DNA of 64,000 nt from Haliotis cracherodii (taxonomy: Eukaryota), in NCBI RefSeq assembly GCF_022045235.1, contig NW_027266264.1, positions 76,136,001 through 76,200,000 on the forward strand. Reading direction: 5' to 3'. Position 1 is the first letter of the stretch. The number at the start of each line of letters is the position of its first letter. Below, piece after piece: positions 27,660-64,000 of this stretch. A program made the translations under genes and the position numbers. A model generated the notes under the pieces. The model was not told the origin of the DNA, searched no databases, and saw nothing but the letters and a program-made list of their open reading frames with translations.

Positions 27660-27923
27660 TTGTTTGTTTGTTTGTTTGTAATTTAACGCCGCACTCAGCA
27701 ATATTCCAGCTATATGACGGCGGTCTGTAAATAATCGAGTCTGGACCAGACAATCCAGTGACTGACGTTTTGAGCATCGATCCACGCAATTGGGATACGA
27801 TGACATGCATCAACCAAGTCAGCGAGCCTGAACACCCGATCCCGTTAGTCGCCTTTTACGACAAGCAAAGTCGCCTTTTACTGAAGTTGCTGAAGACCTA
27901 TTCTACCCCGGATCTTCACGGGT
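27660..27923 (-). mobile_element. SINE-type repeat, family 1; its duplicate at 56227-56447 forms the inversion junction
   Basis: Full copy here; the duplicate is truncated at GGAATAT. Confidence 0.8.
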
Positions 27924-30900
27924 TTCAGTGGTCATTAAACAAATCAGCATAATTTCGAACTTGTACAAGCAGCAATGCACAAACATAACATACACGCATG
28001 CGCATGCACGTTGCTATACAATTATCTTCAACGCGATATAAACTCCATTCCATCTTGCCTCACCTCAAATTGTGATTAAATGTGATAAATCTGTAGTCAG
28101 AGTTGTGTGCCATTTTAAACTCTGACCCTTTTTTGAGCTTCACACTTCGGCCATGCTCCAAAATTGCCAGAAAATACATGTCATCACACTGTTAACGTTA
28201 TCTCGTCAGAAACTTGAGACGAATTTCCTGAAATTTGACATACTTGTTCCCACCAATGATGACATCCCAATTTGTCAGCCATATTGAAAAACCTATACTT
28301 GGCCGTTACTGAATGTTGCGTCAATCTCGGTATCACGTCACAGGCTACCGTGACTGGGTAGAAAGGTTCAGAACAGTTAAACATTCCAAACATTGTTTGG
28401 AAAAGATTTATCTGCTCACGAAATGTGCATTTGGTGTTTTTTACCAAAGTATAATTTATTCAATGTAAAAAACTCCTCCTTCCTGAGACAAGTATATGTT
28501 TTGAAGCGTTGACTAAAATTATTCTGTCTCAAACATAAATTATGTTTGTTTGTTTGTTTCTTTGCACTCAGCAATATCCCAGCTAAATGACGGCGGTCTG
28601 TAAATAATCGAATTCGGACCAGACAATCGAGTCATTGGCATTATGAGTTAACGACATTATCATTTGATCCATGAAGGCTTGGACACGCCGTGGGGGGCAA
28701 CTACTTGGTACCTTACAAAGACCACTGTGATCGACAATACTTGGATTGGGCACCGTCTGGAAGAATCTCAGCTGTGACGGACTGACTGTGTACCATCCTC
28801 TAATGCACCCGAACGTCATGCCAAACTTACAACCTCTGTGGATTCAGTGTACTTAACGCTTTGTATTAGGTGGTCACAATTTCACATTTTTGAGGCTGCT
28901 GTATTAACAAACAATAACGTAAAACTTTACACTGTATCATTCTCAATTTAATACAAGCATGAAAAACTAACCGACATTGTTTTCCATCGTAGCTCATCAG
29001 TCAGTGTTGTTACGTGTCGATTCCCAAATTGAAACAATATGTTAACCCAGAAATCTGTACGTAAAAGAGTTTGGCATGAAACCAACAAACAACCAACAAG
29101 TGGTATACACTCAACAAATGTATCACACAATTCACTAGGTACTGCAACTATACTCAACAACAAAAGTTCCTGTGACACCAATATTTTAGTGTATTTTTCA
29201 TACAAGTGAAGTTTGGTTTTCAATATTGTAGTACACTATTGGAATCAAGTCACAAAAACGCAACTGCTACAGAAAAGCATGCATTCTATGCAAAAGTTGA
29301 CTTTTATGCAAGCCCTACGCATTTCACTACCCAAGAATTGGTATAAAAACATGTGCGTTAACGGGATTCCATATGCATTGTTTCAAGAAGCATCCCTGGC
29401 CTTCGACGAATATCTTCACAAACCGTACGTCGTCGCCTCAAATGTGCAGGAATTGTCGCCAGAAGACCCGCCAGGTGTCCCATTTTGTCAGGAAACCACC
29501 GTCAAGCACGTCTACAGAGGTGCAGACAGAGTCTACGCTGCACGGCCATGCAGTGGGGACAAGTTCTATTCACTGACGAGTCTCGTTTTCACCTCAGCCA
29601 CAGCGATGGATTGATTCGGGTGTACCGACGTCCAGGTGAACGTTACGTCAATCATTGTGTCGTGGAAGAAGATCGGTTCGGGGGCGGCAGCATAATGGCA
29701 TGGGGTGGAATTACAGCAAGACAGAGGACCCGTTTGATAGTGGAAGAGGGGAGCTGGTCTCGATGTAACGAAATGTGAGAGGAAATGTGTGAAAAATGCG
29801 AGAGGCACGTTCTTGTCCCCTTATAGATGGTCTTATAGATGGTCTAACTAGCTCCATCTCAGTCACACTAGCATCTAAATATAGTAACTTCCCCCCACTG
29901 CTTTCATAAAAGAGTACTACATTCCCGACACCTAATCATTGTCCAAATGCAAAACAATGAGCTTCCAGCGCATCTCTACAGAAACAATATAATACACTTA
30001 CAATCGTTATTTGACAATAACATACACTACCATGTAACAATGTATGAAATGACTGTCTGTCGTCCGCCATTCAATAACATTTTCTCTCATTACTAATGGA
30101 TTCATTTAACATAGATACAGATGTTAAAACACATGTACAGATGCAGATTTGTTCATATAAAGTGACTGCTGGTGATATTTCTGAAATAAATGATACAATA
30201 CTGCCGAAACTGTCCAAACATGCCTTTAATGGTCAAGACGTCTGTATTACTATGGTTGCTGTAAAAAAAACTTATAAAAACAATTTCCATAATCCTAATT
30301 ATGAAATCTCTTCAAGGTTGTTGGAAGTAAGTAATGATCAAGACGTCAGTTTTTCGTGCGAACTAATTGCAGAACAATGTGATAACTTAAAGATACAAAG
30401 ATAGATTCACTACGAAACGAGTGTTACAAGTCATATTACTTTCCGAATGCAATGACACACACGTTTCCTTGATTCAAGTCAACACGTGCAGGTCCTGTCT
30501 CCAGTGGGAAATGACAGGGCGTTATATACACAAAAGTCGTTATATATGACACATAGTCCTAACAGTGAAGGGTCAGTCCAGTATCCGCCAGCCCCACATC
30601 CTGCTAACAGTGTACAGCGAGCTCAGTACGCTGGTCCAACATACCACTGTACAGACAGTGTGCGACTACAGACGTTCTTCTTATTTCCTCGAAACAACAG
30701 CACTCTTCAAGATGACATGCCAGAACAGATCAATTACTCTCACAACCACGGAACGGTTTATATTCGACGCTCCGACGATGGTGTTCATGCTCCTCATTCT
30801 GGTGGTTGGAATATTTGGAAACATATTGGTGTTGTATATATACACTCGGAAAATACGAATACATATTTTTGGATTCTTTGTTAAACTTTTGGCTGTTTTT

Positions 30901-31150
30901 GACCTGGTTTCTACAGTGGTTGCTGTCCCAACTACGCTGATTTTCCGACTTACCTCCCCTGATTATAATGATGCCGGACATTTGTGCCAAGTGATGTCAT
31001 TCGTGAAGCACTTTAACACTCTTAATTCGGGATTAATGTTCATCATCATTGCAGTTCAAAGATACAAGAAAGTATGCCAACCAAACAAATCGCAGATGTC
31101 AGAAATACTTGCGAAAAAATTGTGCCTAACTTCTGTCTGTGTTTCTGCAA
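27701..31150 (+). repeat. Segmental duplication arm A (inverted copy at ~53050-56447)
   Basis: ORF-track peptides at 27758, 28184, 28583, 28948, 29373 and 29485 recur almost identically on the opposite strand at 56196, 55701, 55329, 54913, 54560 and 54358. Confidence 0.92.
29380..29780 (+). pseudogene. Tc1/mariner transposase fragment
   Basis: HRQARLQRC...WGQVLFTDESRF...RVYRRPGERY...FGGGSIMAWGGI. Confidence 0.85.
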
Positions 31151-31740
31151 TGGCGAGCATGCCAATCATTTTTGTCACAAGTGAAACGATGACGTGTATT
31201 GAGAGGGGAAACGACTTTGTTCTCGTGCCCATTTGTGATTTTACCTCTGATACGAAACGGAGCCTTCCGTCGATCATGTATGCAACCTGGGTTGGAGTTG
31301 AACTTGTAGGAATCACTACAACTCTTACTGTCTTGTATCGTGCTATTGTCAAAGCACTTAGAGCTCACATCAGGGATACTGCCGCCAGTATTCGCCCCAC
31401 ACCGAATTCTAGCAGAGATGTAGCCAGGACAGCTACTATCACCTTCTTTGTTCTTACTTTGGTGTTTCTAATCTCGTCAGCGCCAGTGGTTGTTCTGACT
31501 ATATATTTCAGTTTGGTTAAATTCGACATTCATTGGTCCCATGCACAGTTCGGAGCCTGTGATCTGGCTGAGAACTTGCTATTCCTCAACTGTGCCATCA
31601 ATCCATTCGTATACAGCTCCACTTCATCTGTGTTCAGAAGGGAACTTAAGCATGTTCTCTGTCTCTTGAAATCTGGAGAGCAAACGTCCTCAACTCAGGA
31701 ATCTCAGCTTCAAAGTCGACACATCATTCCAGCAACATAA
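30712..31740 (+). CDS. GPCR-2: intronless rhodopsin-class orphan GPCR, 342 aa (5' type A, 3' type X)
   Basis: MTCQNRS start, GIFGN, LAVFD, QRY, PICDF, NPFVY; reading frame intact. Confidence 0.93.
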   Translation: MTCQNRSITLTTTERFIFDAPTMVFMLLILVVGIFGNILVLYIYTRKIRIHIFGFFVKLLAVFDLVSTVVAVPTTLIFRLTSPDYNDAGHLCQVMSFVKHFNTLNSGLMFIIIAVQRYKKVCQPNKSQMSEILAKKLCLTSVCVSAMASMPIIFVTSETMTCIERGNDFVLVPICDFTSDTKRSLPSIMYATWVGVELVGITTTLTVLYRAIVKALRAHIRDTAASIRPTPNSSRDVARTATITFFVLTLVFLISSAPVVVLTIYFSLVKFDIHWSHAQFGACDLAENLLFLNCAINPFVYSSTSSVFRRELKHVLCLLKSGEQTSSTQESQLQSRHIIPAT

Positions 31741-32955
31741 ATAACATTCATCGCCCTTTATTGACTTGTACCATCTGTTCCCGTGTTCAGGTGAACACTT
31801 GTATGTGTTCGTGGCGGTTGCCACAGGATACGGGTTGACAGGATACGCTCAACTTTTCGCGAACACCTGGTATCGTCAAGAATTCATGATGATATGTTAA
31901 CACATGTCTTGGAGATTTCTTACAAACATGGAAATTGTATGGCTGCTTTTATACAATCTCATTAAAATCAGACCTTAGTTCTCGCTTCCGCTAAACAAAG
32001 ATCTGAATACATGCCATTAGAGGTCACGTCAGAACGACCTTTCATCCGACTAATCAGAGCGTCGCTTACCAGATTATGAAAGCGACAGTCGGGATGTGAT
32101 TTCTAATCAAGCAGCCTCGAAAACTTTAACACGGAGCATTCCGAACGATACTTACGGGTTTAACGACTGAATCCATACAATCTAGACCATCTATTAGCCA
32201 TTCCAGAATGTTCTTTTGTTCAGGTTTTAAATTTGTAATCGAGAATTTGTCAAAATACGTTTCGAAGCGTAGTCGCCTATTTGAAATTAGTGCCGTAAAG
32301 CACGAGAAAGCTCTCTTCTGATTGGTCAATCCATTGGTCGGTCAAAGTTCGCGCAAGGTCAGTCTGACGTGACCCGTAATGGGATGTCCTCAGATCTTTG
32401 TTTAGCGGTAGCGAGAACTAAGATCTGATTTTAATGAGATTGGCTTTTATCGGACGTCCTGTAAATGTTAGATAAGATGACGACCCTGTTCCACAAAGCA
32501 ATCTCAACAGAACGACGATCGTAAGCCTATGTGAAAGTAGTTCGTTGTCATGCTTTGCAATAAACGTTTATTTTCTTTGTTGGCAAGTGCTTAGCATGTT
32601 GTATTTTGTTTTGTTTATCTTTTTGTATCAGTGCTTAAGGTACTATTTCAACTGCAATATTTGTTTTGGTTAGTAACGTCGTGTGTAGTCATCTGTAATG
32701 CGAGGTTTTGGTACCTAGGGTGTGAAATGGGGTCGTACTATACTTGCGGTCAACCCGGCACTGACGTTGGACATTGCAACTTCACATTTCGTCCTATATA
32801 ACTATTACCAAAACAAGTTTTGCAAATGTGTACCAACGTTATCTGATTTTCTTATTTTATGATATATATTACCTGCAACTGAAGTTTAACTGAGCCTCGC
32901 CTCGCCTCGATCTCGGTAGCCTAGCCAGCTAAAACGTGACTAAATGTCACTAATC
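31030..32955 (+). repeat. Segmental duplication arm C (inverted copy ~38656-40225; direct copy ~62900-64000)
   Basis: The 3' half of GPCR-2 plus flank is the reverse complement of the GPCR-3 3' half plus flank. Similarity ends at GTCACTAATC (32955) / GATTAGTGA (38656). Confidence 0.9.
31954..32442. mobile_element. Non-autonomous AcademH-like TIR element with RecQ-like remnant
   Basis: ~90-bp TIRs CAATCTCATTAAAATCAGA...; 9-bp TSD GCTTTTATA/GCTTTTATC; empty site present in the inverted arm (~39270-39290). Internal minus-strand FSITNLKPEQKNILEWLIDGLDCM resembles the RecQ Q-motif region. Confidence 0.7.
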
Positions 32956-33241
32956 TTAAAACAAAGTTACGTGAACTTTCATGACAGTTGGGTGGACGCA
33001 GTCATTTTGCTTACACTCCAATAGTTTGAGTATGGGTACTAAATCGTCCCATAGTCTTCCTTGAAAGGTTCCCCTCCCATAGTTAAACAAGAGCGGTCGC
33101 CCTCCCATAGTACAGCATGATTTTTGCAAAATTATTTTGTGATACATGCTCGGGAGAAGATACAGGAAATGTGTCTTATACTCTTCACTAACTTCAACAA
33201 AATATAACAAGATTATGTCACTGTTGACCCAACGTTTATTC

Positions 33242-36016
33242 TCAGAATGTTAGGGACAAAACAACGCCATCCCTAAGAACCAATTTAAGATCACGTTCAT
33301 TCCTCGAAGCTGTGTCATCATTTGTCTCTTTGGTACTGGTCAAAGTTGATGCAGTTGATGCCGTTGACGTAGATCTGATTACTGTCGACTCAGTTGGGAA
33401 TGCAGGTTTACTTGATTTCCTCTGAATGATGTTGTCAACACGGGCTTCCATCTCCGCAGATGTCCTCTACGTTTAAATAATAAATTAATGCATTTCGGTT
33501 ATGGAAATGGCCTGGTTTGTTTAATCCGTGTAATGAACGATATTCATCCATATTTGGCCCCATCCAAAACATTTTCCTTTCATTAACGACCATCCCTTAT
33601 ACTTAAGTGAGTGAGTGCGTATGGTTTTACGCCGCTTTTAGCAATATTCCAGCAATATCACGGCGGGAGACACCAGAAATGGGCTTCACACATTGTACCC
33701 ATGTCGGGAATCGAACCCGGGCCTTCGGCGTGACGAGCGAACGATTTAACCACTAGACTATCCGACCGCCCCCCTTATACTTATACTAAATACTAGATTT
33801 TTCATTGTCATGTTTTAGATGTCACACATATACGAAAAAGTTGTTTTTTTCAAAGTGACCCCCACACAACTGAGCTTTCCGTTCGATCACTTGAGAGCGT
33901 ATTAGTAACATTAGTAGTATTTTGCGGACAAGCATATACTACAAACCAGCGCAAATGTATCAACAAACCATACCTTGTAGCTTCGTATTGCCACAGACTT
34001 GTGCCCTGTCCTCTCAGCGATAAGCTGTTCGTCTAGGCCAGAGTCATACAGACGTGTTGCAGTGGTGGCCCTTAAGGAGTGGTTGGAATAAAAACCACTA
34101 AAACCTGCCACTTTACACAGTCTTCCGATAGTGCCTCTTAAAGGATGTAATCCAATCGGAATGTCAGCATACCATGTATTTTCTCTCACAAATTTCAAGG
34201 GCCTCAAGTAAAATGTCAGCATACCATGTATTTTCTCTCACAAATTTCAAGGGCCTCAAGTAAAATGCGGTGCATTTTCCGTCTTTAGGTCTGAAAATAA
34301 CATAAATAAATAATTTATATACACACATGTAGTTTCAATGTCTAAACACGATCGAGTAAAAGTCAGTAATGACAATGCCCCGCGCACGGGGGCGTGAAGT
34401 TCATTTTGTTAACGTCATTAAACTTAATGACGTCCCAATATAGTATGACATCATAGTGAAATATTGTTCACGTTTACCATCGATGCTGAAATATGTATTG
34501 CTTCAACTTTGTTAAGTCACATGTACACCATTGGGATCAAATATAATTGGTTGGTCATGCCACTTTCAGCTATATTTCAGTTATATCGTGGCGGCCTATT
34601 AATAAATGTAAACGGGAAAAAATATAGAGCAGTTCTCTACCAGACAGCCATGGGCTGACGACATGAGCAACGATCTACGAAGGCTCGATCGACAACAACC
34701 AGAACACATTACATGACCACTTCCCCCACTCCTATTATGTAGCCTTTTAGGACAGTCAGGGTATACCGAGGACCCATTCTACCCCGGAAATTGCGTCACA
34801 AAATGGTAATGAAGTCATAATAATAGGTGACGTGTTATGAACACTTGAGTTGAAAATTCCAAGACAGTTAAATCAACTTCCAATATACTCTTAAAAATTA
34901 CTTCACTGATATCACTGATATACTGTCAAGTTCATTGATAACTTACCTGAGTGACATGTACTTTTCATAAAGCCGAACAAGGCACCTCTCTGGACGCATT
35001 TCGTTCATACTGTCGATGTTTTAAGCCACCTCTGTTTGTTTTGGACACATCTTCCATGTATTTTAGACCTTTCAACCCATCAGCACCTACTGTTATTTCG
35101 AACTGTGAATTCGGGCCCGTTCTAAGATATCGGTGCTCATCACCAGCCCTCAGAGCACAATTGAGGCCAATTAAATACACCATTGTATCTAATAGCTGTT
35201 GGGGGGTACCCTCCCCCAGCATCCCCTTCTCCCACAACATGTCTTCCTGGTCCACACTGATCACTTCAGCCTGACTTTTCACTATCCCGATTCCCTGTCT
35301 TGCCAAATATTTCATTCTCGCATCTAGCACGGACCTTAATCCTTGAAACATCGGAGATTCGAAAAAATTCAGTTGACTGCCGTTTCTTCTGATATAATAT
35401 TGTAGGGACGAGACAATTTCATAAAGAGTATTTCCGCGATATTCCTCGCCCTTCTGATTTCTGACCTCAATCATAAAAAACATCAATGTTTTATTTAACT
35501 CCCTTTCCTCCTGAGCCAGTGACACAATGTCAGGGCTCAATACCATGTCCTCTGTTCTGCCCCTCTTACGCCGTTCCTTCACCCACCCTTGATACAAGCG
35601 AACTCCCCACATACTCTTGTTTTCAGTATTTGATGAGTATGCTGAATCACACAACTTCTTAATGTCAATATCAGATGTTGGCTTGGCAAACCTTGCTGAA
35701 CTTGAATCTACGCTTTGTTCAGAAGCGCCAGTGATTGGGGTATTTCCGATGAAGTTAATAGCGAGCGAGTGTTACAAGGTAGCATATCAAGAAGGTTAGA
35801 TTCAATTGCTTGGCTTGCTTTGTACAGATCAGTGTCGGAACCTGAGGAAAACCCTTCGAGATCAATCAACTCACATTTACCAACATCAAAGTTTAGAAGT
35901 TCATATGAATCCAAATTTAGTAAAGTTTCAAAATCTGAAATAACGCCCACCTCAAAAGTGTTCGTGAAACTATTTTGTGTGACAAATACATCGTTGTCGG
36001 AATCATTCGCACTCAT
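33242..36016 (-). pseudogene. Three-exon tyrosine recombinase (DUF3504/ZMYM-KCTD1-QRICH1-like Crypton YR)
   Basis: Exons 36016-34947, 34290-33974 and 33466-33242 with GT..AG introns. Joins read YMSLR|PKDG and IRSYK|RTS. Motifs ALRAGDEH, SKTNRGG, NHSLRAT, TGHKS and RSYK are present. Frameshifts near 35700-35760, near 35000, and from a 52-bp tandem duplication at ~34161-34265. Confidence 0.88.
33606..33771 (-). mobile_element. tRNA-derived SINE, family 2, inside Crypton intron 2
   Basis: TSD CCCTTATACTTA at 33594-33605 and 33772-33783. Confidence 0.9.
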
Positions 36017-36363
36017 GCTGACAACCCTGCCGAGTCGAACGTCGTTCATCGAAAATCGAAAAATATCATGTTGCATGTGCAGTTATACAGACCACACTCC
36101 CATAGTTTTGCACGTTTATTGGTGTGTTTTAGCGACTTGGTTTGTCATGACCATGTACAACTAGAACACACCTCCGTTAGTTTGGCACATGAATATCACT
36201 TGAAGATTAGTTTGAGGCATCAACTTGATCGAACTTTGTTTTAAGTAGGAGAAAGTCCTCAATCTCGCCATTGTTTTCGCACGTGAAACTTGTTCTCGGC
36301 CTAACGGCCTCGAACAAGCTTCACGTGCGAAAATAATGGCGAGATTGAGGACATTCTCCTATA

Positions 36364-49300: not shown

Positions 49301-50060
49301 AGAATAAATACGCAAATAGAAATAGCTTGCAATAGGATTATCTAAATGTGTAGAGTTAAAAAAGGAAAAGATGAAAAACACACATAATTTGTTGGATGGA
49401 CTGGGAAAGATGTGATGAATCGTCACATCTCACTGGCCTGTAGCAGAGACTGACGGCAAGAACTAGGGGTACTTTGAGTTTCTTTTTGTTATTAATGTGT
49501 TTAATGCCCAGTTCAAAGGAACTGGATACTTTTGTATTTGTTTTCCCCTCGATCTTTCAATTACCCCCTTCTTACTTTTGATTTCCCTCTAACTGTATAG
49601 AAACAAATCAAAATATCAATATAATTAAATAATGTATATGATAAATTAGTGGAAATGTTTATCACAAAGGGTAATTACATTAAAGGAAATATTTCCCTTC
49701 TCTCTTATTTCCTCGAAACACGTCTCGACAACTGAAGTCTGACGTTAAATATATATTATGAGAACGTGCGGTCGGTATTAATAGTACTGTAATGTTTGGA
49801 ATAATGAGGAATAAATGCCTTTTAGGAAACCACGTGATAAATCACATACGTGTACAGTGATGAAAATATCTTGCTGGGTCATAAATATGCATACCTTTTG
49901 GTGAGGACAGCACCTGTTCTTGCATAAGGTCGTGTGTGAACTTTGTTTAAGGAAGTCAGCAATAGTCCCGCTTTTGCACGCCTGTAAATAACCAGGCATG
50001 TCCCAATCAAGCCAACCAGCAATTGCCTCCATGAGCAACGACCCTGGTAAATATGATGTA

Positions 50061-51585
50061 TACTCACACGCAAAACGCAAGTGGTTTTAAGCAAATAGGT
50101 AACAAACACGGAACCATAAATTGATACGAGTTTTAGCATGTAGTGAAGCCTGATGGTGTTATCAATATTTTTGGTTGCATTTTGGAAGCCCCGAGTAAAA
50201 ACGCAACATAAAAAACGAATCGCCAAAACGCACCATTTCAATGAATCTGTGGGTATCATGCACCCATTTCTCGCGAAATCGAAAATGCACGAACTGTCAC
50301 GAACTGTCGTGGGTATAAAACTGTGGCCGATTCTTGGACCTACCACTCCTTGATCAACAATGCCACGCCTAACTCAAATTCAGAGAAACCAGGCTATCGG
50401 ACGTTTAGAAGCTTGAGAGTCTGTCCAAGTTGCCCGCCATTTCAACGTTAACATAACCACAATTTACCGTCTCCTGCATCGATACAATGCTACACAGACC
50501 ACAGATGACCTTCCTCGGAGCGGTCGTCCGAGAGTCACCACAGCTCGACAAGATCGGCAGATTACCTGTCAACGCCAGCGACATCCGTTCCTAACTGCAA
50601 GCGAAAGTGTTCGACAGGCCATAGGAACACACAATCGAAACATTAGCCGGGACACTGTGATCCGTCGTCTCCGTTCCAACAACCACAGATGTCGCCGACC
50701 AGCACGTCGTCCTGTTCTCCAAACACGGCATCGACAAGCACAACTTCAGTGGGCACAGAGTCATCGCTATTGGCGTCATCGTGAGTGGAGGCGTGTCATC
50801 TTCTCTGATGTAAGTCGCTTTTGTGTCTCACATGCAGACGGAAGAGTCAGAATTTGGCGGCGTCGAGGTGATCGTTTCGCTGACAGAAACGTTGTGGAAA
50901 GGGATCCATTGGGTGGACCTAGCGTCATGATATGGGCAGGGATTGGACTTAATGCGAGACTTGGACCCATGTGCTTTCTGAATGTTGGTCAAGGTCGGGG
51001 ACACGGCGTCACTGCTCAGCAGTATATCGACCAAGTGATCATACCCCACGTTGTTCCATTTTTTGCACAACATCAACAACACATTTTCCAGGACAACGCC
51101 CGTCCCCATGTTGCCTGAGCTACCATGGCCTTTCTGCAACAACACAACATCCGTGTTCTACCGTGGCCAGCCCTCAGCTCTGATCTGAGCCCCATCGAAC
51201 ACTTGTGGGATGAGGTTCAAAGGCATCTGCACAATGTGCGCCCAGTCCCTACAACTGCCGATGAACTTCGCACAGCTGCTCTGAATGTGTGCAGGAGGAT
51301 CCCTAGGGCCTTCACAAATCGTCTGATCCACTCCATGTACAGGAGATGTGTGGCAGTGATCAATGCTAATGGTGGTCACACCAGGTATTGACTGACATTT
51401 TGGGTATTGACCCGAAACTGTGTAAGCCCTTAACATTTAAAAAACCCAATTATGTCATCTGCGTTTTAATCCATTAAACTGTCTTCAGTCAAATTTTTGT
51501 CAATCTTGCCCTATTAGTATTTCTTGTGTTCACTGTTGAAAATAAATACTGCATACTCGACTTGCGTTTCTTTTGCGTGTGAGTA
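50061..51585 (+). mobile_element. Near full-length Tc1 (DD34E) element with inactivated transposase (~50360-51391)
   Basis: TIRs TACTCACACGCAAAA / TTTTGCGTGTGAGTA. Motifs FSDVSRF, QDNARPH and SDLSPIEHLW, with 34 residues between the second D and E. In-frame stops, e.g. 51116. Confidence 0.9.
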
Positions 51586-52438
51586 TCTGATTTTAATTTA
51601 AACCCTTATGAGGAAGTCGCTGGCATCATGAATCATATACCCATGTCCGTACTACACATCTTCATGTACTGTGGACATGTTCTGTACAGCCTGCTGGAAC
51701 ACATGCCCTCAGGTACACATTGTTGTACATGTTATTTAATCAAGTGAAAGAAAAGGGATAAATCACATTTGTATCATGTTTACAATCTGAGCATCTGTGT
51801 CAAATGATAAATAGAGATAATTAATATCCGAGCACGTGTGTCATGCTGATTTTACGTCACAATAAGATTCAAATGACGTCAACAATGCACTGGTTGAACT
51901 GGTTGAACAAAATAATAATGCATAACACTGCCAATGTCTTGCCCAGTATTATCATCTTCAACTCAACCAAACAAGTAACAGACATCTTCATTACGTTCCA
52001 TCGGTGCTTAGATGATGCAGCAACGCGAAATACGCTTTGCTACCACCGAGTCAATATGGCACATGATTTCAGATTGGCCCTACAAACATCGCACAGCCAT
52101 TTCCTTAATCATGAGTCCATTGTGCGATTCCGACCACATCGGATCACCATCAACTAATGATGATACCGGCTGTTCCGAAATGGTGAGCGGATCCTGCCTC
52201 ACCGGTGGCACAGGTCACAAACACATGCAAAGTCAAGTGTAAGTAAGTGAGCGAGCGAGTAGGGTTATACACCACTTTCAGTAACATATATATCCCGGCA
52301 GGGAACATCAGAAATGGGCTTCACATATTGTACTCATGCATATATCAAAACCGGGCTTCGGCGTGACACAAGGCTTCCCCACCGCCCCCACCTCAACAAA
52401 CACGGAAACATAGGGTATACGGAAGGAACATGTGTTAT

Positions 52439-53662
52439 TTATGTTGTGTTAGAGATGCGCGTTTCTGGAAGCTGGTGCTGACTTTGAAGCTGTGAGTCCT
52501 GAGTTTCAGATGTTTGCTCCCCAGAATTCCAGGCACAGAGAACACGTTTAAAATGTCTCCTGAACATAGATGAAGTGAAGCTGTATACAAATTGATTGAT
52601 GGCACAGTTGAGAAACATCAAGTTCACAGCAAGGTCAAAGGTTTCAATCTGTGCATGGGACAAATTATACATGTCGAATTTAACCAAACTGAAATATACA
52701 GTAAGGACAACACTTGGCGCCGACGAGAGTAGAAACACCACAGTAAGAACAAAGAAGGTTATAGTTGCTGTCCTGGTTTTATCCCTGCTAGAATTCTGTG
52801 TGGAGCGAAGACTGGCAGCTCTATCCCTGTTGTGAGTTCTAAGTGCTTTGACAATAGCACTATACAACACAGTCAGAGTTGCAGTTATTCCTATTAGCTC
52901 AACGCAAACCCAGGTTGCAAGCATGATCGACTGAACTGTTAGTTTTGTATATGAGCTAAACTCACAGATGGGCACGAGAACAAAGTCGCTTCCCCTTTCA
53001 ATACACATCAACGTGTCTCTTACGAAAAATATGTGTGGCGTGCTCGCTATTGCAGAAACACAGATTGAAATTAGGCAAAGTTTTTTCGCAAGCATTTCTG
53101 ACATCTGCGAGTTGTATGGTTGGCATACTTTCTTGTATCTTTGAACTGCAATGATGATGAATATTAATCCAGAATTAAGAGTGTTAAAGTGCTTCACGAA
53201 TGTCATCACTTGGCACAAATGTCCGGCATCAACATCATCAGGGGAGGTAAGTCGGGAAATCAGCGTAGTTGGGACAGCAACCACTGTAGAAACCAGGTCA
53301 AAAACAGCCAAAAGTTTAACAAAGAATCCAAAAATATGTATTCGTATTTTCCGAGTGTATATATACAACACCAATATGTTTCCAAATATTCCAACCACCA
53401 GAATGAGGAGCATGAACATCATCGTCGGAGCATGGAATATAAACCGTTCCCTGGTTGTAAGAGTAATTGATCTGTTCTGGCATGTAATCTTGAAGAGTGC
53501 TGTTGTTTCGAGGAAAGAAGAAGAACGTCTGTAGTCGCACACTGTATGTACTCTGTTAGTAGTATGCTGGACCAGCGTATACTGAGCTCGCTGTACACTG
53601 TTAGCAGGATGTGGGGCTGGTGGATACTGGACTGACCCTTCACTGTTAGGACTATGTGTCAT
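52439..53662 (-). CDS. GPCR-5: rhodopsin-class orphan GPCR with ancestral ATG mutated to ATT and NPxxY>NQxxY; possibly an incipient pseudogene
   Basis: Open 7TM frame. The homologous start at 53488-53486 is ATT. In-frame ATGs exist upstream at 53662 and downstream at the start of TM1 (PTMMFML). Confidence 0.75.
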   Translation of the reverse strand: MTHSPNSEGSVQYPPAPHPANSVQRAQYTLVQHTTNRVHTVCDYRRSSSFLETTALFKITCQNRSITLTTRERFIFHAPTMMFMLLILVVGIFGNILVLYIYTRKIRIHIFGFFVKLLAVFDLVSTVVAVPTTLISRLTSPDDVDAGHLCQVMTFVKHFNTLNSGLIFIIIAVQRYKKVCQPYNSQMSEMLAKKLCLISICVSAIASTPHIFFVRDTLMCIERGSDFVLVPICEFSSYTKLTVQSIMLATWVCVELIGITATLTVLYSAIVKALRTHNRDRAASLRSTQNSSRDKTRTATITFFVLTVVFLLSSAPSVVLTVYFSLVKFDMYNLSHAQIETFDLAVNLMFLNCAINQFVYSFTSSMFRRHFKRVLCAWNSGEQTSETQDSQLQSQHQLPETRISNTT

Positions 53663-54354
53663 ATATAACGACTATTTGTGTATATAACGCCCTGTCATTT
53701 CCCACTGGAGACAGGACCTGCACATGTTGACTTGAATCAAGGAAACGTGTGTGTCATTGCATTCGGGAAGTAATATGACTTGTAACACTCGTTTCGTAGT
53801 GAATCTATCTTTGTATCTTTAAGTTATCACATTGTTCTGCAATTAGTTTGCACGAAAAACTGACGTCTTGATCATTACTTACTTCCAACAATCTTGAAGA
53901 GATTTCATAATTAGGATTATGGAAATTGTTTTTATAAGTTTTTTTACAGCAACCATAGTAATACAGACGTCTTGACCATTAAAGGCATGTTGGGACAGTT
54001 TCGGCAGTATTGTATCATTTATTTAAAAAATATCACCAGCAGTCACTTTATATGAACAAATCTGCATCTGTACATGTGTTTTAACATCTGTATCTATGGT
54101 AAATGAATCCATTAGTAATGAGAGAAAATGTTATTAAATGGCGGACGACAGACAGTCATTTCATACACTGTTACATGGTAGCGTATTTTATTGTCAAATA
54201 ACGATTGTAGTAAATGTAGTACTCTTTTATGAAAGCAGTGGGGGGAAGTTACTATATTTAGATGCTAGTGTGACTGAGATGGATCTAGTTAGACCATCTA
54301 TAAGACCATCTATAAGGGGACAAGAGCGTGCCTCTCGCATTTTTCACACATTTC

Positions 54355-54760
54355 CTCTCACATTTCGTTACATCGAGACCAGCCTCCCTCTTCCACTATC
54401 AAACGGGTCCTCTGTCTTGCTGTAATCCAACCCAATGCCATAACGCTGCCGCCCCCGAACCGATCTTCTTCCACGACACAATGATTGACGTAACGTTCAC
54501 CTGGACGTCGGTACACACGAATCCGTCCATCGCTGTGGCTGAGGTGAAAACGAGACTCGTCAGTGAATAGAACTTGTCCCCACTGCATGGCCGTCCAGCG
54601 TAGACGCTGTCTGCACCTCTGTAGACGTGCCTGACGGTGGTTTCCTGACAAAATCGGACACCTGGCGGGTCTTCTGGCGACAATTCCTGCACATTTGAGG
54701 CGACGACGTACGGTTTGTAAAGATATTCGTCGAAGGCCAGGGATGCTTCTTGAAACAATG
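54355..54760 (-). pseudogene. Tc1 transposase fragment (duplicate of 29380-29780)
   Basis: Near-identical peptide on the opposite strand. Confidence 0.85.
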
Positions 54761-56445
54761 CATATGGAATCCCGTTAACGCACATGTTTTTATATCAATT
54801 CTTGGGTAGTGAAATGCATGGGGCTTGCATAAAAGTCAACTTTTGCAAAGAATGCATGCTTTTCTGTAGCAGTTGCGTTTCTATGATTTGATTCCAATAG
54901 TGTACTATAATATTGAAAACCAAACTTCACTTGTTTGAAAAATACACGAGAATATTGGTGTCACAGGAACTTTTGTTGTTGAGTATAGTTGCAGTTATTT
55001 TATGTGTACCTAGTGAATTGTGTGATACATTTGTTGAGTGTATACCACTTGTTGGTTGTTTGTTGGTTTCATTCCAAACTCTTTTACGTACAGATTTCTG
55101 GGTTAACATATTGTTTCAATTTGGGAATCGACACGTAACAACACTGACTGATGAGCTACGATGGAAAACAATGTCGGTTAGTTTTTCATGCTTGTATTAA
55201 ATTGAGAATGATACAGTGTAAAGTTTTACGTTATTGTTTGTTAATACAGCAGCCTCAAAAATGTGAAATTGTGACCACCTAATACAAAGCATTAAGTACA
55301 CTGAATCCACAGAGGTTGTAAGTTTGGCATGACATTCGGGTGCATTAGAGGATGGTACACAGTCAGTCCGTCACAGCTGAGATTCTTCCAGACGGTGCCC
55401 AATCCAAGTATTGTCCATCACAGTGGTCTTTGTAAGGTACCAAGTAGTTGCCCCCGACGGCGTGTCCAAGCCTTCATGGATCAAATGATAATGTCGTTAA
55501 CTCATAATGCCAATGACTCGATTGTCTGGTCCGAATTCGATTATTTACAGACCGCCGTCATTTAGCTGGGATATTGCAGAGTGCAAAGAAACAAACAAAC
55601 AAACATAATTTATGTTTGAGACAGAATAATTTTAGTCAACGCTTCAAAACATATACTTGTCTCAGGAAGGAGGAGTTTTTTACATTGAATAAATTATACT
55701 TTGGTAAAAAACACCAAATGCACATTTCGTGAGCAGATAAATCTTTTTCAAACAATGTTTGGAATGTTTAACTGTTCTGAACCTTTCTACCCAGTCACGG
55801 TAGCCTGTGACGTGATACCGAGATTGACGCAACATTCAGTAATGGCCAAATATAGGTTTTTCAATATGGCTGACAAATTGGGATGTCATCATTGGTGGGA
55901 ACAAGTATGTCAAATTTCAGGAAATTCGTCTCAAGTTTCTGACGAGATAACGTTAACAGTGTGATGACATGTATTTTCTGGCAATTTTGGAGCATGGCCG
56001 AAGTGTGAAGCTCAAAAAAGGGTCAGAGTTTAAAATGGCACACAACTCTGACTACAGATTTATCACATTTAATTACAATTTGAGGTGAGGCAAGATGGAA
56101 TGGAGTTTATATCGCGTTGAAGATAATTGTATAGCAACGTGCATGCGCATGCGTGTATGTTATGTTTGTGCATTGCTGCTTGTACAAGTTCGAAATTATG
56201 CTGATTTGTTTAATGACCACTGAAACCCGTGAAGATCCGGGGTAGAATAGGTCTTCAGCAACTTCAGTAAAAGGCGACTTTGCTTGTCGTAAAAGGCGAC
56301 TAACGGGATCGGGTGTTCAGGCTCGCTGACTTGGTTGATGCATGTCATCGTATCCCAATGGCGTGGATCGATGCTCAAAACGTCAGTCACTGGATTGTCT
56401 GGTCCAGACTCGATTATTTACAGACCGCCGTCACATAGCTGGAAT

Positions 56446-56631
56446 ATCAATCCATTTGTATACAGCTTCACTTCATCTGTGTTCAGGAGACATTTTAAAC
56501 GTGTTCTCTGTGCTTGGAATTCTGGAGAGCAAACATCCGCAACTCAGGACTCACAGCTTCAAAGTCATCACAGCATTCCAGAAACAAGCTTCTCTAACAC
56601 AACAAAAAGAACATCCATGCTTGTCCCTTGA
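56446..56631 (+). pseudogene. GPCR-6: 5'-truncated fragment (TM7 INPFVY to stop) duplicated from GPCR-4
   Basis: INPFVYSFTSSVFRRHFKRVLCAWNSGEQ...SMLVP* fused to a SINE at 56446. Confidence 0.9.
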
Positions 56632-62581: not shown

Positions 62582-63610
62582 ATGGCGTGCCTGAACAGCA
62601 CAATACTTGCTTCAACAAGAGAACTGTTTGTATTCCATATGCCAACCGTGATATTCCTTCTTCTGGTTTTGATGTTTGGAATATTTGGAAACCTCTTGGT
62701 GCTGTACATTTACACTCAGAAAATAAGGGTAGTCATTTTCGGATTTTTTGTTAGGGTTTTGGCTATATTTGACATAGTCACAACATGTGTAGCTGTGCCG
62801 GCCTTGATGATATTCCGGCTTACCTCCCCTGGATATATCGACGCTGAACGTATGTGCCAAATGATGATATTCGTGAACCACATCAATGCTCTTAATTCTG
62901 GATTAATGTTCATCATCATTGCAGTTCAAAGATACAAGAAAGTATGCCAACCACACAAATTGCAGATGTCAGAAATGCTTGCGAAAAAACTTTGCCTAAC
63001 TTCTGTCTGTGTTTCTGCAGTAGCGAGCATGCCAATCATATTTGTGGTAAGTGAAACGATGATGTGTATTGAAAGAGGAAGGGACTTTGTTCTTGTGCTC
63101 ATTTGTGATTTTACCTCTGATACGAAACGGAGCCTTCCGTCGATCATGTATGCAACCTGGGTTGGAGTTGAACTGGTAGGAATCACTACAACTCTTACTG
63201 TCTTGTATCGTGCTATTGTCAAAGCACTTAGAGCTCACATCAGGGATACTGCCGCCAGTATTCACCCCACACCCAATTCTAGCAGAGATGTAGCCAGGAC
63301 AGCTACTATCACCTTCTTTGTTCTTACTTTGGTGTTTCTAATCTCGTCAGCGCCAGTGGTTGTTCTGACTATATATTTCAGTTTGGTTAAATTCGACATT
63401 CATTGGTCCCATGCACAGTTCGGAGCCTATGATCTGGCTGTGAACTTGCAATTCCTCAACTGTGCCATCAATCCATTCGTATACAGCTCCACTTCATCTG
63501 TGTTCAGAAGGGAACTTAAGCATGTTCTCTGTCCCTTGAAATCTGGAGAGCAAACGTCCTCAACTCAGGAATCTCAGCTTCAAAGTCGACACATCATTCC
63601 AGCAACATAA
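62582..63610 (+). CDS. GPCR-7: intronless rhodopsin-class orphan GPCR, 342 aa (5' type B, 3' type X as in GPCR-2)
   Basis: MACLNST start; all 7TM motifs present; reading frame intact. Confidence 0.93.
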   Translation: MACLNSTILASTRELFVFHMPTVIFLLLVLMFGIFGNLLVLYIYTQKIRVVIFGFFVRVLAIFDIVTTCVAVPALMIFRLTSPGYIDAERMCQMMIFVNHINALNSGLMFIIIAVQRYKKVCQPHKLQMSEMLAKKLCLTSVCVSAVASMPIIFVVSETMMCIERGRDFVLVLICDFTSDTKRSLPSIMYATWVGVELVGITTTLTVLYRAIVKALRAHIRDTAASIHPTPNSSRDVARTATITFFVLTLVFLISSAPVVVLTIYFSLVKFDIHWSHAQFGAYDLAVNLQFLNCAINPFVYSSTSSVFRRELKHVLCPLKSGEQTSSTQESQLQSRHIIPAT

Positions 63611-63823
63611 ATAACATTCATCGTCCTTTATTGACTTGTACCATCTGTTCTCGTGTTCTGGTGAACGCTTGTATGTGTTTGTGGCGGTTGCCACAGGATA
63701 CGGGTTGACAGGATACGCTCAACTTTTCGCGAACACCTTGTATCGTCAAGAATTCATGATGATATGTTAACACATGTCTTGGAGATTTCTTACAAACATG
63801 GGAATTGTATGGCTGCTTTTATA

Positions 63824-64000
63824 CAATCTCATTAAAATCAGACCTTAGTTCTCGCTTCCGCTAAACAAAGATCTGAATACATTCCATTAGAGGTCACGTC
63901 AGAACGACCTTTCATCCGACTAATCAGAGCGTCGCTTACCAGATTATGAAAGTGACAGTCGGGATGTGATTTCTAATCAAGCAGCCTCGAAAACTTTAAC
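63824..64000. mobile_element. AcademH-like MITE at the same insertion site as 31954; runs off the window
   Basis: Identical junction GGCTGCTTTTATA|CAATCTCATT. Confidence 0.8.

What the first reader, a model, noticed from the sequence alone, without database searches (positions are those of the whole stretch)
27701..64000. Modular, recombination-shuffled GPCR array built from interlocking inverted repeats
Seen: 5' modules come in two types, A (MTCQNRSITL; GPCR-2/4/5) and B (MACLNxTILAS; GPCR-3/7). 3' modules also come in two types, X (RRELKHVL plus flank; GPCR-2/3/7) and Y (RRHFKRVL; GPCR-4/5/6). The combinations A-X, B-X and A-Y all occur as open frames. They join across a near-invariant core NSGL(M/I)FIIIAVQRYKKVCQP (TM3-ICL2), which could act as the crossover hub. 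Three inverted duplications (27.7-31.1/53.1-56.4, 31.0-33.0/38.7-40.2 and 39.3-46.7/56.4-63.8 kb) align these cores. Inference: exchange between inverted paralogs would swap the promoter/N-terminal half against the C-terminal half without losing DNA. That would be a combinatorial route to receptor (possibly chemoreceptor) diversity, and the block may be inversion-polymorphic.
Basis: partly seen in the sequence, partly recalled or inferred. Interest (0 to 1): 0.85.

Follow-up and report, generated by a model that had tools for sequence, protein, structure and literature searches.

The report
Young mosaic GPCR gene array, abalone
A 70-kb cluster of eleven closely related receptor genes in the black abalone was built by a few recent cut-and-paste duplications, one of them inverted, and later patched by exchange between copies; this is an ordinary way for receptor families to grow, not a dedicated shuffling device.

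Summary
The window (Haliotis cracherodii, scaffold 1, 76.136-76.200 Mb) carries intronless class-A GPCR genes with two 5' types (A, B) and two 3' types (X, Y). It also holds the three inverted duplications, and the coding sequences are true mosaics (PHI z=-11.6; incongruent segment trees; AU p=0.001-0.004).

The proposed mechanism is not supported.
- The array runs past the window: 11 genes or fragments in about 70 kb. It reads as four overlapping copies of one ancestral unit (G5-G4-G3-G12 types), joined at three blunt, non-homologous junctions. Two of these junctions killed genes (G6, G9).
- The one new combination, A-X (G2), is G5-type upstream, G4-type in the middle and G7-type at the 3' end. 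That order matches the gene order in the unit, which points to unequal exchange between direct paralogs with loss of DNA.
- The reciprocal B-Y product is absent.
- The G2 switches lie at nt 36-55 and 518-537, not in the core (nt 313-372).
- The neighbouring Crypton recombinase copies are broken members of a dispersed transposon family.
- An all-direct GPCR array elsewhere in the genome is mosaic too.

Read-based tests of the assembly and of inversion polymorphism could not be run. Interest is low to moderate.

The parts
20907..21905 (+). G1, the divergent outgroup paralog at the edge of the array (about 58% aa identity to G4). It is intact.
   Evidence: It has a 97% identical ortholog named from H. 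rufescens (P0005).
27701..30711 (+). upA: the 3-kb upstream region of G2. Its inverted copy lies upstream of G5 (56447-53489).
   Evidence: Non-coding divergence is 1.95%. The left end lies in a roughly 135-bp interspersed repeat.
30712..31740 (+). G2, an open chimeric gene (A-X) made of three parts: G5-type from the upstream region to nt 36, G4-type from nt 55 to 518, and G7-type from nt 537 to the stop and onward.
   Evidence: MaxChi 136.6, p<=0.0005, with informative sites 97:4 on the left and 2:58 on the right. Site table. Segment trees and AU tests.
30747..30766 (+). First switch in G2, from G5-type to G4-type (nt 36-55).
   Evidence: All upstream sites and nt 32 and 36 side with G5. From nt 55 to 327, 5 of 6 informative sites side with G4, and all later ones do.
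31229..31248 (+). Second switch in G2, from G4-type to G7-type (nt 518-537, TM4). It lies 146 nt 3' of the core.
31024..31083 (+). Core motif (TM3 end / QRY / ICL2) in G2. The same motif lies at 40172-40231 (G3), 47204-47263 (G4), 53117-53176 (G5) and 62894-62953 (G7).
   Evidence: dS within columns 280-402 is 0-0.14 among array genes, against 0.6 to G1.
31741..38503 (+). Long downstream flank of G2, a direct copy of the flank of G7 (63611-69880). It ends at junction J2.
   Evidence: Non-coding divergence is 1.80%.
32956..36363 (-). Crypton-like (tyrosine-recombinase transposon) insertion, present only in the G2 and G7 flanks. The local reading frame is fragmentary.
   Evidence: Pfam QRICH1 and DUF3504. 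ORFs. At least 62 dispersed genomic matches; the second local copy carries a stop codon. The insertion is absent from the G11 flank.
38503..38504 (.). J2: a blunt junction between the direct copy T4 and the inverted copy T1.
   Evidence: homology to 69880 stops and homology to the reverse complement of 86573 starts, with no shared bases.
39554..40543 (-). G3 (B-X), intact. Sister of G11 and G7.
40544..46504 (-). Intergenic spacer between G4 and G3. It is present in three copies; the other two are at 56632-62581 and 78557-84531.
46505..47575 (-). G4 (A-Y), intact. Sister of G10.
   Evidence: Of 45 differences from G10, 27 have both states present in other paralogs.
47576..52438 (-). Spacer between G5 and G4, containing a Tc/mariner-like transposase remnant (50657-51118). 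It is copied in inverted orientation at 72362-77485.
52439..53488 (-). G5 (A-Z-Y). Nt 412-850 are only 80-85% identical to every other copy. The canonical start codon is ATT and TM7 reads NQFVY. The frame stays open upstream to an ATG at 53662.
   Evidence: The Z segment is found nowhere else in the genome except in G9.
53489..56447 (-). upA': the inverted copy of upA. It ends at junction J1.
56446..56447 (.). J1: a junction with 1-2 nt of microhomology between the distal end of upA' and nt 886 of a G4-type gene.
56446..56631 (+). G6: a dead 61-codon 3' fragment of a G4-type gene, cut by J1.
62582..63610 (+). G7 (B-X), intact. It is the nearest relative (98-100% identity) of the G2 3' half.

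Best explanation
This is a young, lineage-specific cluster of intronless class-A (peptide-receptor-like, orphan) GPCR genes in the black abalone.

The ancestral unit was about 20 kb, in one orientation: upA-G5type, G4type, G3type(B-X), downstream flank, up12-G12type. It was multiplied into four overlapping partial copies:
- T4: 27701-38503, plus strand.
- T1: 38504-56447, minus strand.
- T3: 56446-71931, plus strand.
- T2: 71932 onward, plus strand.

The copies are joined at three blunt or microhomology junctions (J2, J1, J3). This is the pattern left by non-homologous or replication-based template switching (FoSTeS/MMBIR-like, DUP-TRP/INV-DUP-like). Two junctions fell inside genes and left dead pieces (G6, G9).

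On top of this, homology-dependent exchange between paralogs (unequal crossing-over, gene conversion) acts. In T4 it collapsed the three-gene series into one open chimera, G2, a Lepore-type fusion with loss of the intervening DNA. Earlier, it homogenised the gene body 3' of nt ~271 between old lineages whose 5' modules remain deeply diverged. It also makes both coding and non-coding identity patchy.

Shown here: the anatomy, the junctions, the mosaicism and the switch points. Inferred: the molecular mechanism and the order of events. Unknown: expression and ligand.
For: Identity of the region. The genome is xgHalCrac1: the scaffold length 89,134,964 matches the paper. All genes are PF00001 members. 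The nearest solved relatives are NPFF1, BRS3 and PrRP receptors, at only E~1e-13.

Block map.

Junctions. All three are sharp. J1 shares 1-2 nt; J2 and J3 share none. G6 is truncated and G9 is frameshifted.

Age of the copies. Non-coding divergence is 1.7-2.5% for all pairs of copies.

Mosaic coding sequences:
- PHI z=-11.6.
- Segment trees place G2 with the A clade for nt 1-280 (support 100/99) and with G7 for nt 600-1000 (support 99/100). AU tests reject the alternatives at p=0.004 and p=0.001.
- dS between A and B modules is 0.75-0.95 for nt 1-279 and 0.05-0.16 further 3', so differing constraint does not explain the pattern.

G2 structure. It is G5-type / G4-type / G7-type, and its flanks match accordingly: 3 kb upstream with G5 and about 7 kb downstream with G7.

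No B-Y gene occurs among the 11 copies, and no other copy of these modules exists elsewhere in the genome.

Sister genes differ 1.4-2.3 times more in coding than in flanking DNA. Most of those differences are states shared with other paralogs.

Non-coding mismatches between copies are over-dispersed, with an index of dispersion of 2.0-3.3.

Control array. The array at 60.34-60.38 Mb, with all genes on one strand, is also mosaic (PHI z=-5.3).

Comparable chimeric fusions by unequal crossing-over are documented for beta-globins (PMC4041002).
Against: - No reads could be laid on the region, so the assembly path and the fixation of the junctions are unverified. Genome-wide heterozygosity is 1.56%, close to the 1.7-2.5% divergence between copies.
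- Markers for the order of events conflict. The Crypton insertion groups T3 with T4. The lowest divergence groups T1 with T2. T1 nevertheless carries upA and the G5 5' part, which T2 lacks.
- G2 could have formed by homologous template switches during the same replicative event, rather than by later unequal crossing-over.
- Clusters of private substitutions in G7 and G10 have no donor in the genome.
- No orthologous locus from another Haliotis species could be fetched to root the copies.
Confidence: 0.75

Rival explanations
1. Reciprocal homologous exchange between inverted paralogs, crossing over in the conserved TM3-ICL2 core, swaps the promoter and N-terminal half against the C-terminal half without DNA loss. 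The block is inversion-polymorphic and acts as a combinatorial generator of receptor diversity.
For: Large, highly similar inverted arms exist: 14.4 kb at 1.68% non-coding divergence, around a 19-kb spacer. Such arms are known substrates for inversion by non-allelic homologous recombination (established knowledge). The core lies in the one block shared by all copies. The mismatch pattern between inverted copies is patchy.
Against: - The reciprocal B-Y chimera is absent from all 11 copies.
- G2's segment order equals the direct gene order, and the intervening DNA is missing.
- The G2 switches lie at nt 36-55 and 518-537, outside the core.
- The inverted architecture is bounded by blunt, non-homologous junctions.
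- An all-direct array is equally mosaic.
Confidence: 0.07
2. A site-specific recombinase system (shufflon- or FLP-like). The adjacent Crypton tyrosine recombinase would invert segments at a short conserved site, the core.
For: A Crypton-like gene with QRICH1/DUF3504 domains and a tyrosine-recombinase C-terminal motif lies between G2 and G3, and again downstream of G7.
Against: - The local copies are fragmentary. The ORF here is 229 aa, against 427-aa open frames elsewhere, and the second local copy carries a stop.
- The family is dispersed, with at least 62 matches on many scaffolds.
- The element is an insertion that is absent from the T1 and T2 copies.
- Breakpoints are scattered and the junctions share no common site.
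Confidence: 0.01
3. Assembly artefact. Some arms are alternative haplotypes, or haplotype-specific structural variants, falsely placed in series in the unphased primary assembly.
For: [quoted passage not shown] Divergence between copies, at 1.7-2.5%, is of similar size. No read test was possible.
Against: - Some regions are present three or four times: the G4-G3 spacer three times and the X 3' module four times. Two haplotypes cannot account for that.
- The copies differ in context at both ends and are joined by unique, sharp junctions inside a gap-free HiFi contig. The only N run is at 23721-23895, outside the array.
- The assembly pipeline included purge_dups.
Confidence: 0.05
4. A single replicative event. 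All four copies and the chimeric G2 arose at once by serial template switching: three non-homologous jumps plus two homology-guided jumps between paralogs. No later unequal crossing-over was needed.
For: All pairs of copies are similarly diverged, at 1.7-2.5%. The path through the ancestral unit is one continuous walk with three jumps. G2's divergence from its three parent types is also about 2%.
Against: The Crypton insertion is shared by only two copies. Divergence between copies is patchy. Both fit several steps or later exchange better. Sequence from one genome cannot separate the two versions.
Confidence: 0.2

Closest known systems
Lepore-type chimeric fusion genes from unequal crossing-over between tandem paralogs (delta/beta-globin; red/green opsin hybrids); see PMC4041002
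   Same: G2 carries the upstream flank and 5' part of the upstream parent type, and the 3' part and downstream flank of the downstream parent type. It is joined in frame within homologous sequence, and the DNA in between is missing.
   Different: There are three parent types and two switch points instead of one. The event sits inside a duplicated copy, so the parental genes persist elsewhere in the array. A replicative origin cannot be excluded.
Complex duplication with an inverted middle copy (DUP-TRP/INV-DUP; FoSTeS/MMBIR template switching), known from human genomic disorders (own knowledge)
   Same: The order is direct copy, inverted copy, direct copy, with blunt or 1-2 nt microhomology junctions. 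Part of the unit is present three or four times.
   Different: In the human cases one junction usually uses a pre-existing inverted repeat; none was identified here. The events here are evolutionary and about 2% diverged, and gene conversion has since overlaid them.
Clustered, single-exon, fast-evolving candidate chemoreceptor GPCR families of molluscs (Aplysia AcCR families, PMC2700072) and vertebrate olfactory receptor clusters with gene conversion (own knowledge)
   Same: Intronless rhodopsin-type genes in tight clusters, with pseudogenes, transposons between the genes, and lineage-specific expansion.
   Different: No expression data tie these genes to chemosensory tissue. Their nearest characterised relatives are peptide receptors. 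Sequence relationship to the AcCR families was not tested.
Bacterial shufflons and invertible DNA switches (R64 Rci, Hin/Gin)
   Same: Only the outward look is shared: inverted repeats flanking gene halves, with a tyrosine-recombinase gene nearby.
   Different: There is no intact recombinase, no common crossover site and no reciprocal products, and the junctions are non-homologous.

Membership tests
Class A (rhodopsin-family) GPCR, Pfam PF00001 | Full-length 7tm_1 match above the gathering score | tested here: met
   Scores are 71-85 bits against a cut-off of 30.5, over profile positions 1-260, for G1-G5 and G7.
Class A (rhodopsin-family) GPCR, Pfam PF00001 | E/DRY motif at the end of TM3 and NPxxY in TM7 | tested here: met
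   All copies, G1 included, carry the variant QRY. NPFVY is present in every copy except G5, which reads NQFVY.
Molluscan chemosensory GPCR families (Aplysia AcCR type) | Single-exon genes clustered in the genome | tested here: met
   The ORFs are uninterrupted, and 11 copies lie within about 70 kb.
Molluscan chemosensory GPCR families (Aplysia AcCR type) | Expression in chemosensory organs | not testable with these tools
Molluscan chemosensory GPCR families (Aplysia AcCR type) | Sequence membership in an AcCR subfamily | not tested
   No AcCR sequences were fetched. The best named relatives are peptide receptors.
Lepore-type fusion by unequal homologous exchange | 5' flank from one parent and 3' flank from another, with an in-frame switch inside homologous sequence | tested here: met
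Lepore-type fusion by unequal homologous exchange | Parents in direct orientation, with segment order equal to gene order | tested here: met
   The unit order G5type-G4type-G3type is seen in T1 and T2. The G2 segment order is given.
Inversion by exchange between inverted paralogs | The reciprocal chimera (B-Y) present on the same chromosome | tested here: not met
   All three B-type genes (G3, G7, G11) carry an X 3' end.
Inversion by exchange between inverted paralogs | Alternative orientations in reads or in different individuals | not testable with these tools
Site-specific invertible DNA (shufflon-like) | An intact recombinase and one conserved crossover site at all junctions | tested here: not met
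   The Crypton copies are broken. Breakpoints lie at 36-55, 274, 411, 521-540, 630, 767 and 942 (alignment columns, apart from G2 nt 36-55), and J1-J3 are blunt.
Template-switch complex duplication (DUP-TRP/INV-DUP-like) | An inverted copy between direct copies, with junctions showing 0-few nt of microhomology | tested here: met

The most novel reading that the evidence does not exclude
The 14-kb inverted arms and the many near-identical gene bodies keep recombining in the germ line. On this reading, black abalone populations segregate alternative orientations and further 5'/3' receptor combinations, and the locus is a standing hotspot that supplies new, possibly chemosensory, receptor variants to selection.
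Probability: 0.1. Interest if true: 0.6.

Novelty: new member of a known kind. Interest (0 to 1): 0.3.

Why it matters
The region is a clean, datable example of how a receptor family expands in a mollusc. A few non-homologous duplication junctions were followed by homologous exchange. That exchange made one new open chimeric receptor and two dead gene fragments.

For annotators of the black abalone genome, it flags one probably decaying gene (G5), two gene fragments (G6, G9) and a region prone to structural variation. Structural variation there could confound short-read population genomics in this critically endangered species.

It does not reveal a new mechanism of diversity generation.

Tried and rejected
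Tools that could not be used:
No test of read support, depth, inversion polymorphism or expression was possible.

Searches that found nothing:
- A protein search restricted to the B-type N-terminal module found only G11.
- DNA searches of the whole genome for donors of the B module and of the G5 'Z' segment found copies only inside this array.
- Findings searches by words added nothing beyond notes on this same window.

Ideas rejected:
- The mosaic pattern reflects only differing protein constraint. Rejected because synonymous divergence drops about 8-fold 3' of nt 279.
- A Crypton recombinase drives inversions. Rejected because the local copies are broken, the family is dispersed, and the element is an insertion missing from two of the four copies.
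- The core is the crossover point of the recent exchange. Rejected by the switch positions.

Unresolved:
- A unique order of the duplication events could not be derived, because the markers conflict.

The N run at 23721-23895 was left as it is.

Full report
**Where the window lies.** The window is G000:C1:76136001-76200000 of a 1.18-Gb genome. A protein from the same 89,134,964-bp scaffold is named Haliotis cracherodii. That scaffold length is the largest scaffold of the published black abalone assembly xgHalCrac1. The assembly used PacBio HiFi at 37x, hifiasm, purge_dups and Omni-C scaffolding; it reports 1.56% heterozygosity and is not fully phased (PMC9709981). The only N run, 23721-23895, lies outside the array and was left untouched.

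**The observation.** Six long ORFs are full-length PF00001 receptors:

| Gene | Window coordinates | Strand |
|---|---|---|
| G1 | 20907-21905 | + |
| G2 | 30712-31740 | + |
| G3 | 39554-40543 | - |
| G4 | 46505-47575 | - |
| G5 | 52439-53488 | - |
| G7 | 62582-63610 | + |

- G6 is only a 61-codon 3' fragment at 56446-56631.
- G5 has ATT in place of the start ATG, and NQFVY instead of NPFVY.
- The three inverted duplications are recovered by self-BLAST.

**The array is larger than the window.** A six-frame search of the genome and 40 kb of fetched flank show further copies:
- G9 (~71560-72352), a broken gene.
- G10 (77486-78556), type A-Y.
- G11 (84532-85521), type B-X. This is the NCBI model P0004.
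- G12 (90193-91191), A-type with a fourth 3' type, W.

The subfamily occurs nowhere else in the genome. The next relatives are about 37% identical, in other clusters. The nearest solved structures are NPFF1, BRS3 and PrRP receptors at about E 1e-13. The receptors are therefore orphans, and a chemoreceptor role is a guess.

**The coding sequences are true mosaics.**
- Sliding-window identity shows A and B at about 72% for nt 1-271, then 91-95% further 3'. G5 drops to 80-85% against every other copy from nt ~409 to ~850. The X and Y types part at about alignment column 767.
- The PHI statistic is 11.6 SD below its permutation mean, with 0 of 2000 permutations as low.
- Segment trees disagree. 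G2 sits in the A clade for nt 1-280 (support 100/99) and is sister to G7 for nt 600-1000 (support 99/100). AU tests reject the opposite groupings at p=0.004 and p=0.001.
- Differing protein constraint is not the cause. Synonymous divergence between A and B modules is 0.75-0.95 in nt 1-279, as deep as the divergence to G1. It is only 0.05-0.16 further 3'.
- A gene model from H. rubra has an A-type N-terminal module (75-78% identity against 54-57% for B). The A/B split therefore predates that species split.

**Anatomy of the block.** The region reads as four overlapping partial copies of one unit. The unit is: upA-G5type, spacer, G4type, spacer, G3type (B-X), downstream flank, up12-G12type.

| Copy | Window coordinates | Strand | Content |
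|---|---|---|---|
| T4 | 27701-38503 | + | upA, G2, downstream flank |
| T1 | 38504-56447 | - | G3, G4, G5, upA' |
| T3 | 56446-71931 | + | G6 fragment, G7, flank, up12', 5' part of G9 |
| T2 | 71932 onward | + | 3' part of G9, G10, G11, flank, up12, G12 |

The three joins are sharp.
- J2 (38503|38504) and J3 (71931|71932) share no bases.
- J1 (56446|56447) shares 1-2 bases.
- J1 joins the far end of upA' to nt 886 of a G4-type gene, which creates the G6 fragment.
- J3 joins nt 369 of a G12-type gene to nt 630 of a G5-type gene, which creates the frameshifted G9.

Each copy is cut at a junction on one side, and on the other side its homology runs past the point where its partner copy is cut. 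This is the trace of a walk through the ancestral unit with three jumps, two of which change strand. The pattern fits non-homologous or replication-based template switching, with an inverted copy between direct ones. That mechanism is inference; the junctions themselves are shown.

Non-coding divergence between copies is 1.7-2.5% for every pair. The events are therefore young and of similar age. For scale, G1 differs at 10 of 332 residues from its H. rufescens ortholog.

**G2, the one new combination.**
- Against G4 and G7, informative sites run 97:4 up to alignment column 521 and 2:58 from column 540 onward (max chi-square 136.6, p<=0.0005).
- Upstream, G2 is homologous over 3 kb only to the G5 upstream region. 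G4 homology starts at -8.
- Within the gene, nt 32 and 36 still side with G5. From nt 55 to 327, 5 of 6 informative sites side with G4, and all later ones do.
- Downstream, G2 stays collinear with G7 for about 7 kb.

G2 is thus G5-type / G4-type / G7-type, which is the order of these gene types in the unit. It lacks the roughly 12 kb that separates them. This is what unequal homologous exchange between direct-oriented paralogs gives: a Lepore-type fusion (compare PMC4041002). Homology-guided template switches during replication would give the same result.

- Exchange between inverted paralogs conserves DNA and must leave the reciprocal chimera on the same chromosome. All three B-type genes carry X, and no B-Y gene exists.
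- The G2 switches lie at nt 36-55 and 518-537. The core is at nt 313-372.
- The core does lie in the one block shared by all copies (columns 275-411), bounded by the A|B boundary and the G5 boundary. That fits exchange stopping where homology ends. It does not indicate a preferred crossover site.
- Other boundaries lie at columns 630, 767 and 942.
- The neighbouring Crypton-like gene is a fragmentary insertion, found only in T4 and T3. It belongs to a dispersed family with at least 62 genomic matches, and its second local copy carries a stop.
- A control array at 60.34-60.38 Mb, with all genes on one strand, is mosaic as well (PHI z=-5.3, with clear window-wise switches).

**Exchange is not confined to gene 'modules'.**
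- Non-coding mismatches between copies are over-dispersed (index of dispersion 2.0-3.3, p from 9e-3 to 2.5e-10) for both inverted and direct pairs.
- Coding DNA differs 1.4-2.3 times more than flanking DNA between sister copies.
- 27 of 45 G4/G10 differences and 31 of 44 G3/G7 differences have both states present in other paralogs, as gene conversion predicts.
- Two clusters of private changes remain unexplained: G7 nt 223-304 and G10 nt 501-568.

**Limits.**
- Read-based tests could not be run, and loci from other species could not be fetched.
- Heterozygosity is close to the divergence between copies, so an assembly artefact cannot be formally excluded. Regions present three or four times, different contexts at both ends of each copy, and unique junctions inside a gap-free HiFi contig all argue against it.
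- The order of events is unresolved. The Crypton insertion groups T3 with T4, whereas the lowest divergence groups T1 with T2.
- Inversion polymorphism across the 14.4-kb arms is plausible in general but untested.

**Verdict.** The region is a real, young, mosaic GPCR array formed by known processes. It is a new member of a known kind, of low to moderate interest.

Noticed in passing
window 62804-62885 (G7 nt 223-304); also L002, about window-equivalent 77986-78053 (G10 nt 501-568): Each site holds a cluster of 7 substitutions that are private to one young sister gene, where about 1 would be expected. The G7 changes are mostly non-synonymous. No donor exists in any paralog or elsewhere in the genome.
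   Followed up: partly
window 32956-36363, and window 64940 to about 68200 (the latter runs into L001): A Crypton-like tyrosine-recombinase transposon is inserted in the downstream flanks of G2 and G7 only. The two copies are about 99% identical, which is closer than the adjoining downstream flank (dn2, 96-97%). This suggests later arrival or conversion. The ORFs are fragmentary.
   Followed up: partly
window 4215-5244, 5915-6547 and 14179-16094: Three satellite arrays, with periods of 35, 43 and 31 bp and 29, 15 and 62 copies respectively. The long ORFs listed across them are artefacts of the repeats.
   Followed up: partly
window 23338-24162, including the N run 23721-23895: A low-complexity Thr/Pro-codon-rich repeat flanks the only assembly gap in the window. 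The gap was left as it is.
   Followed up: no
window 27657-27800, with at least 15 further copies in the 114 kb examined (for example 48217-48351, 43636-43769, 59406-59536): A roughly 135-bp interspersed repeat (SINE- or MITE-like). The left end of the upA duplication, and therefore junction J1, lies inside one copy.
   Followed up: partly
window 50657-51118: A Tc3/mariner-type transposase remnant (a weak HTH_Tnp_Tc3_2 match) lies in the G5-G4 spacer. It is duplicated with the block at about 73800-74300.
   Followed up: no
window 43391-43903 (+) and 59272-59784 (-): A duplicated 170-aa ORF in the G4-G3 spacer has no Pfam match. It shares a short peptide with an ORF at 48354-48818, so it is probably repeat-derived.
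   Followed up: no
G000:C1:60335001-60385000 (L006-L010): A second tandem array of at least 7 related GPCR genes, all on the minus strand. Its paralogs are strongly mosaic. For example, one gene is 52-65% identical to its neighbours in nt 421-600 but 97-100% identical in nt 661-1000.
   Followed up: partly
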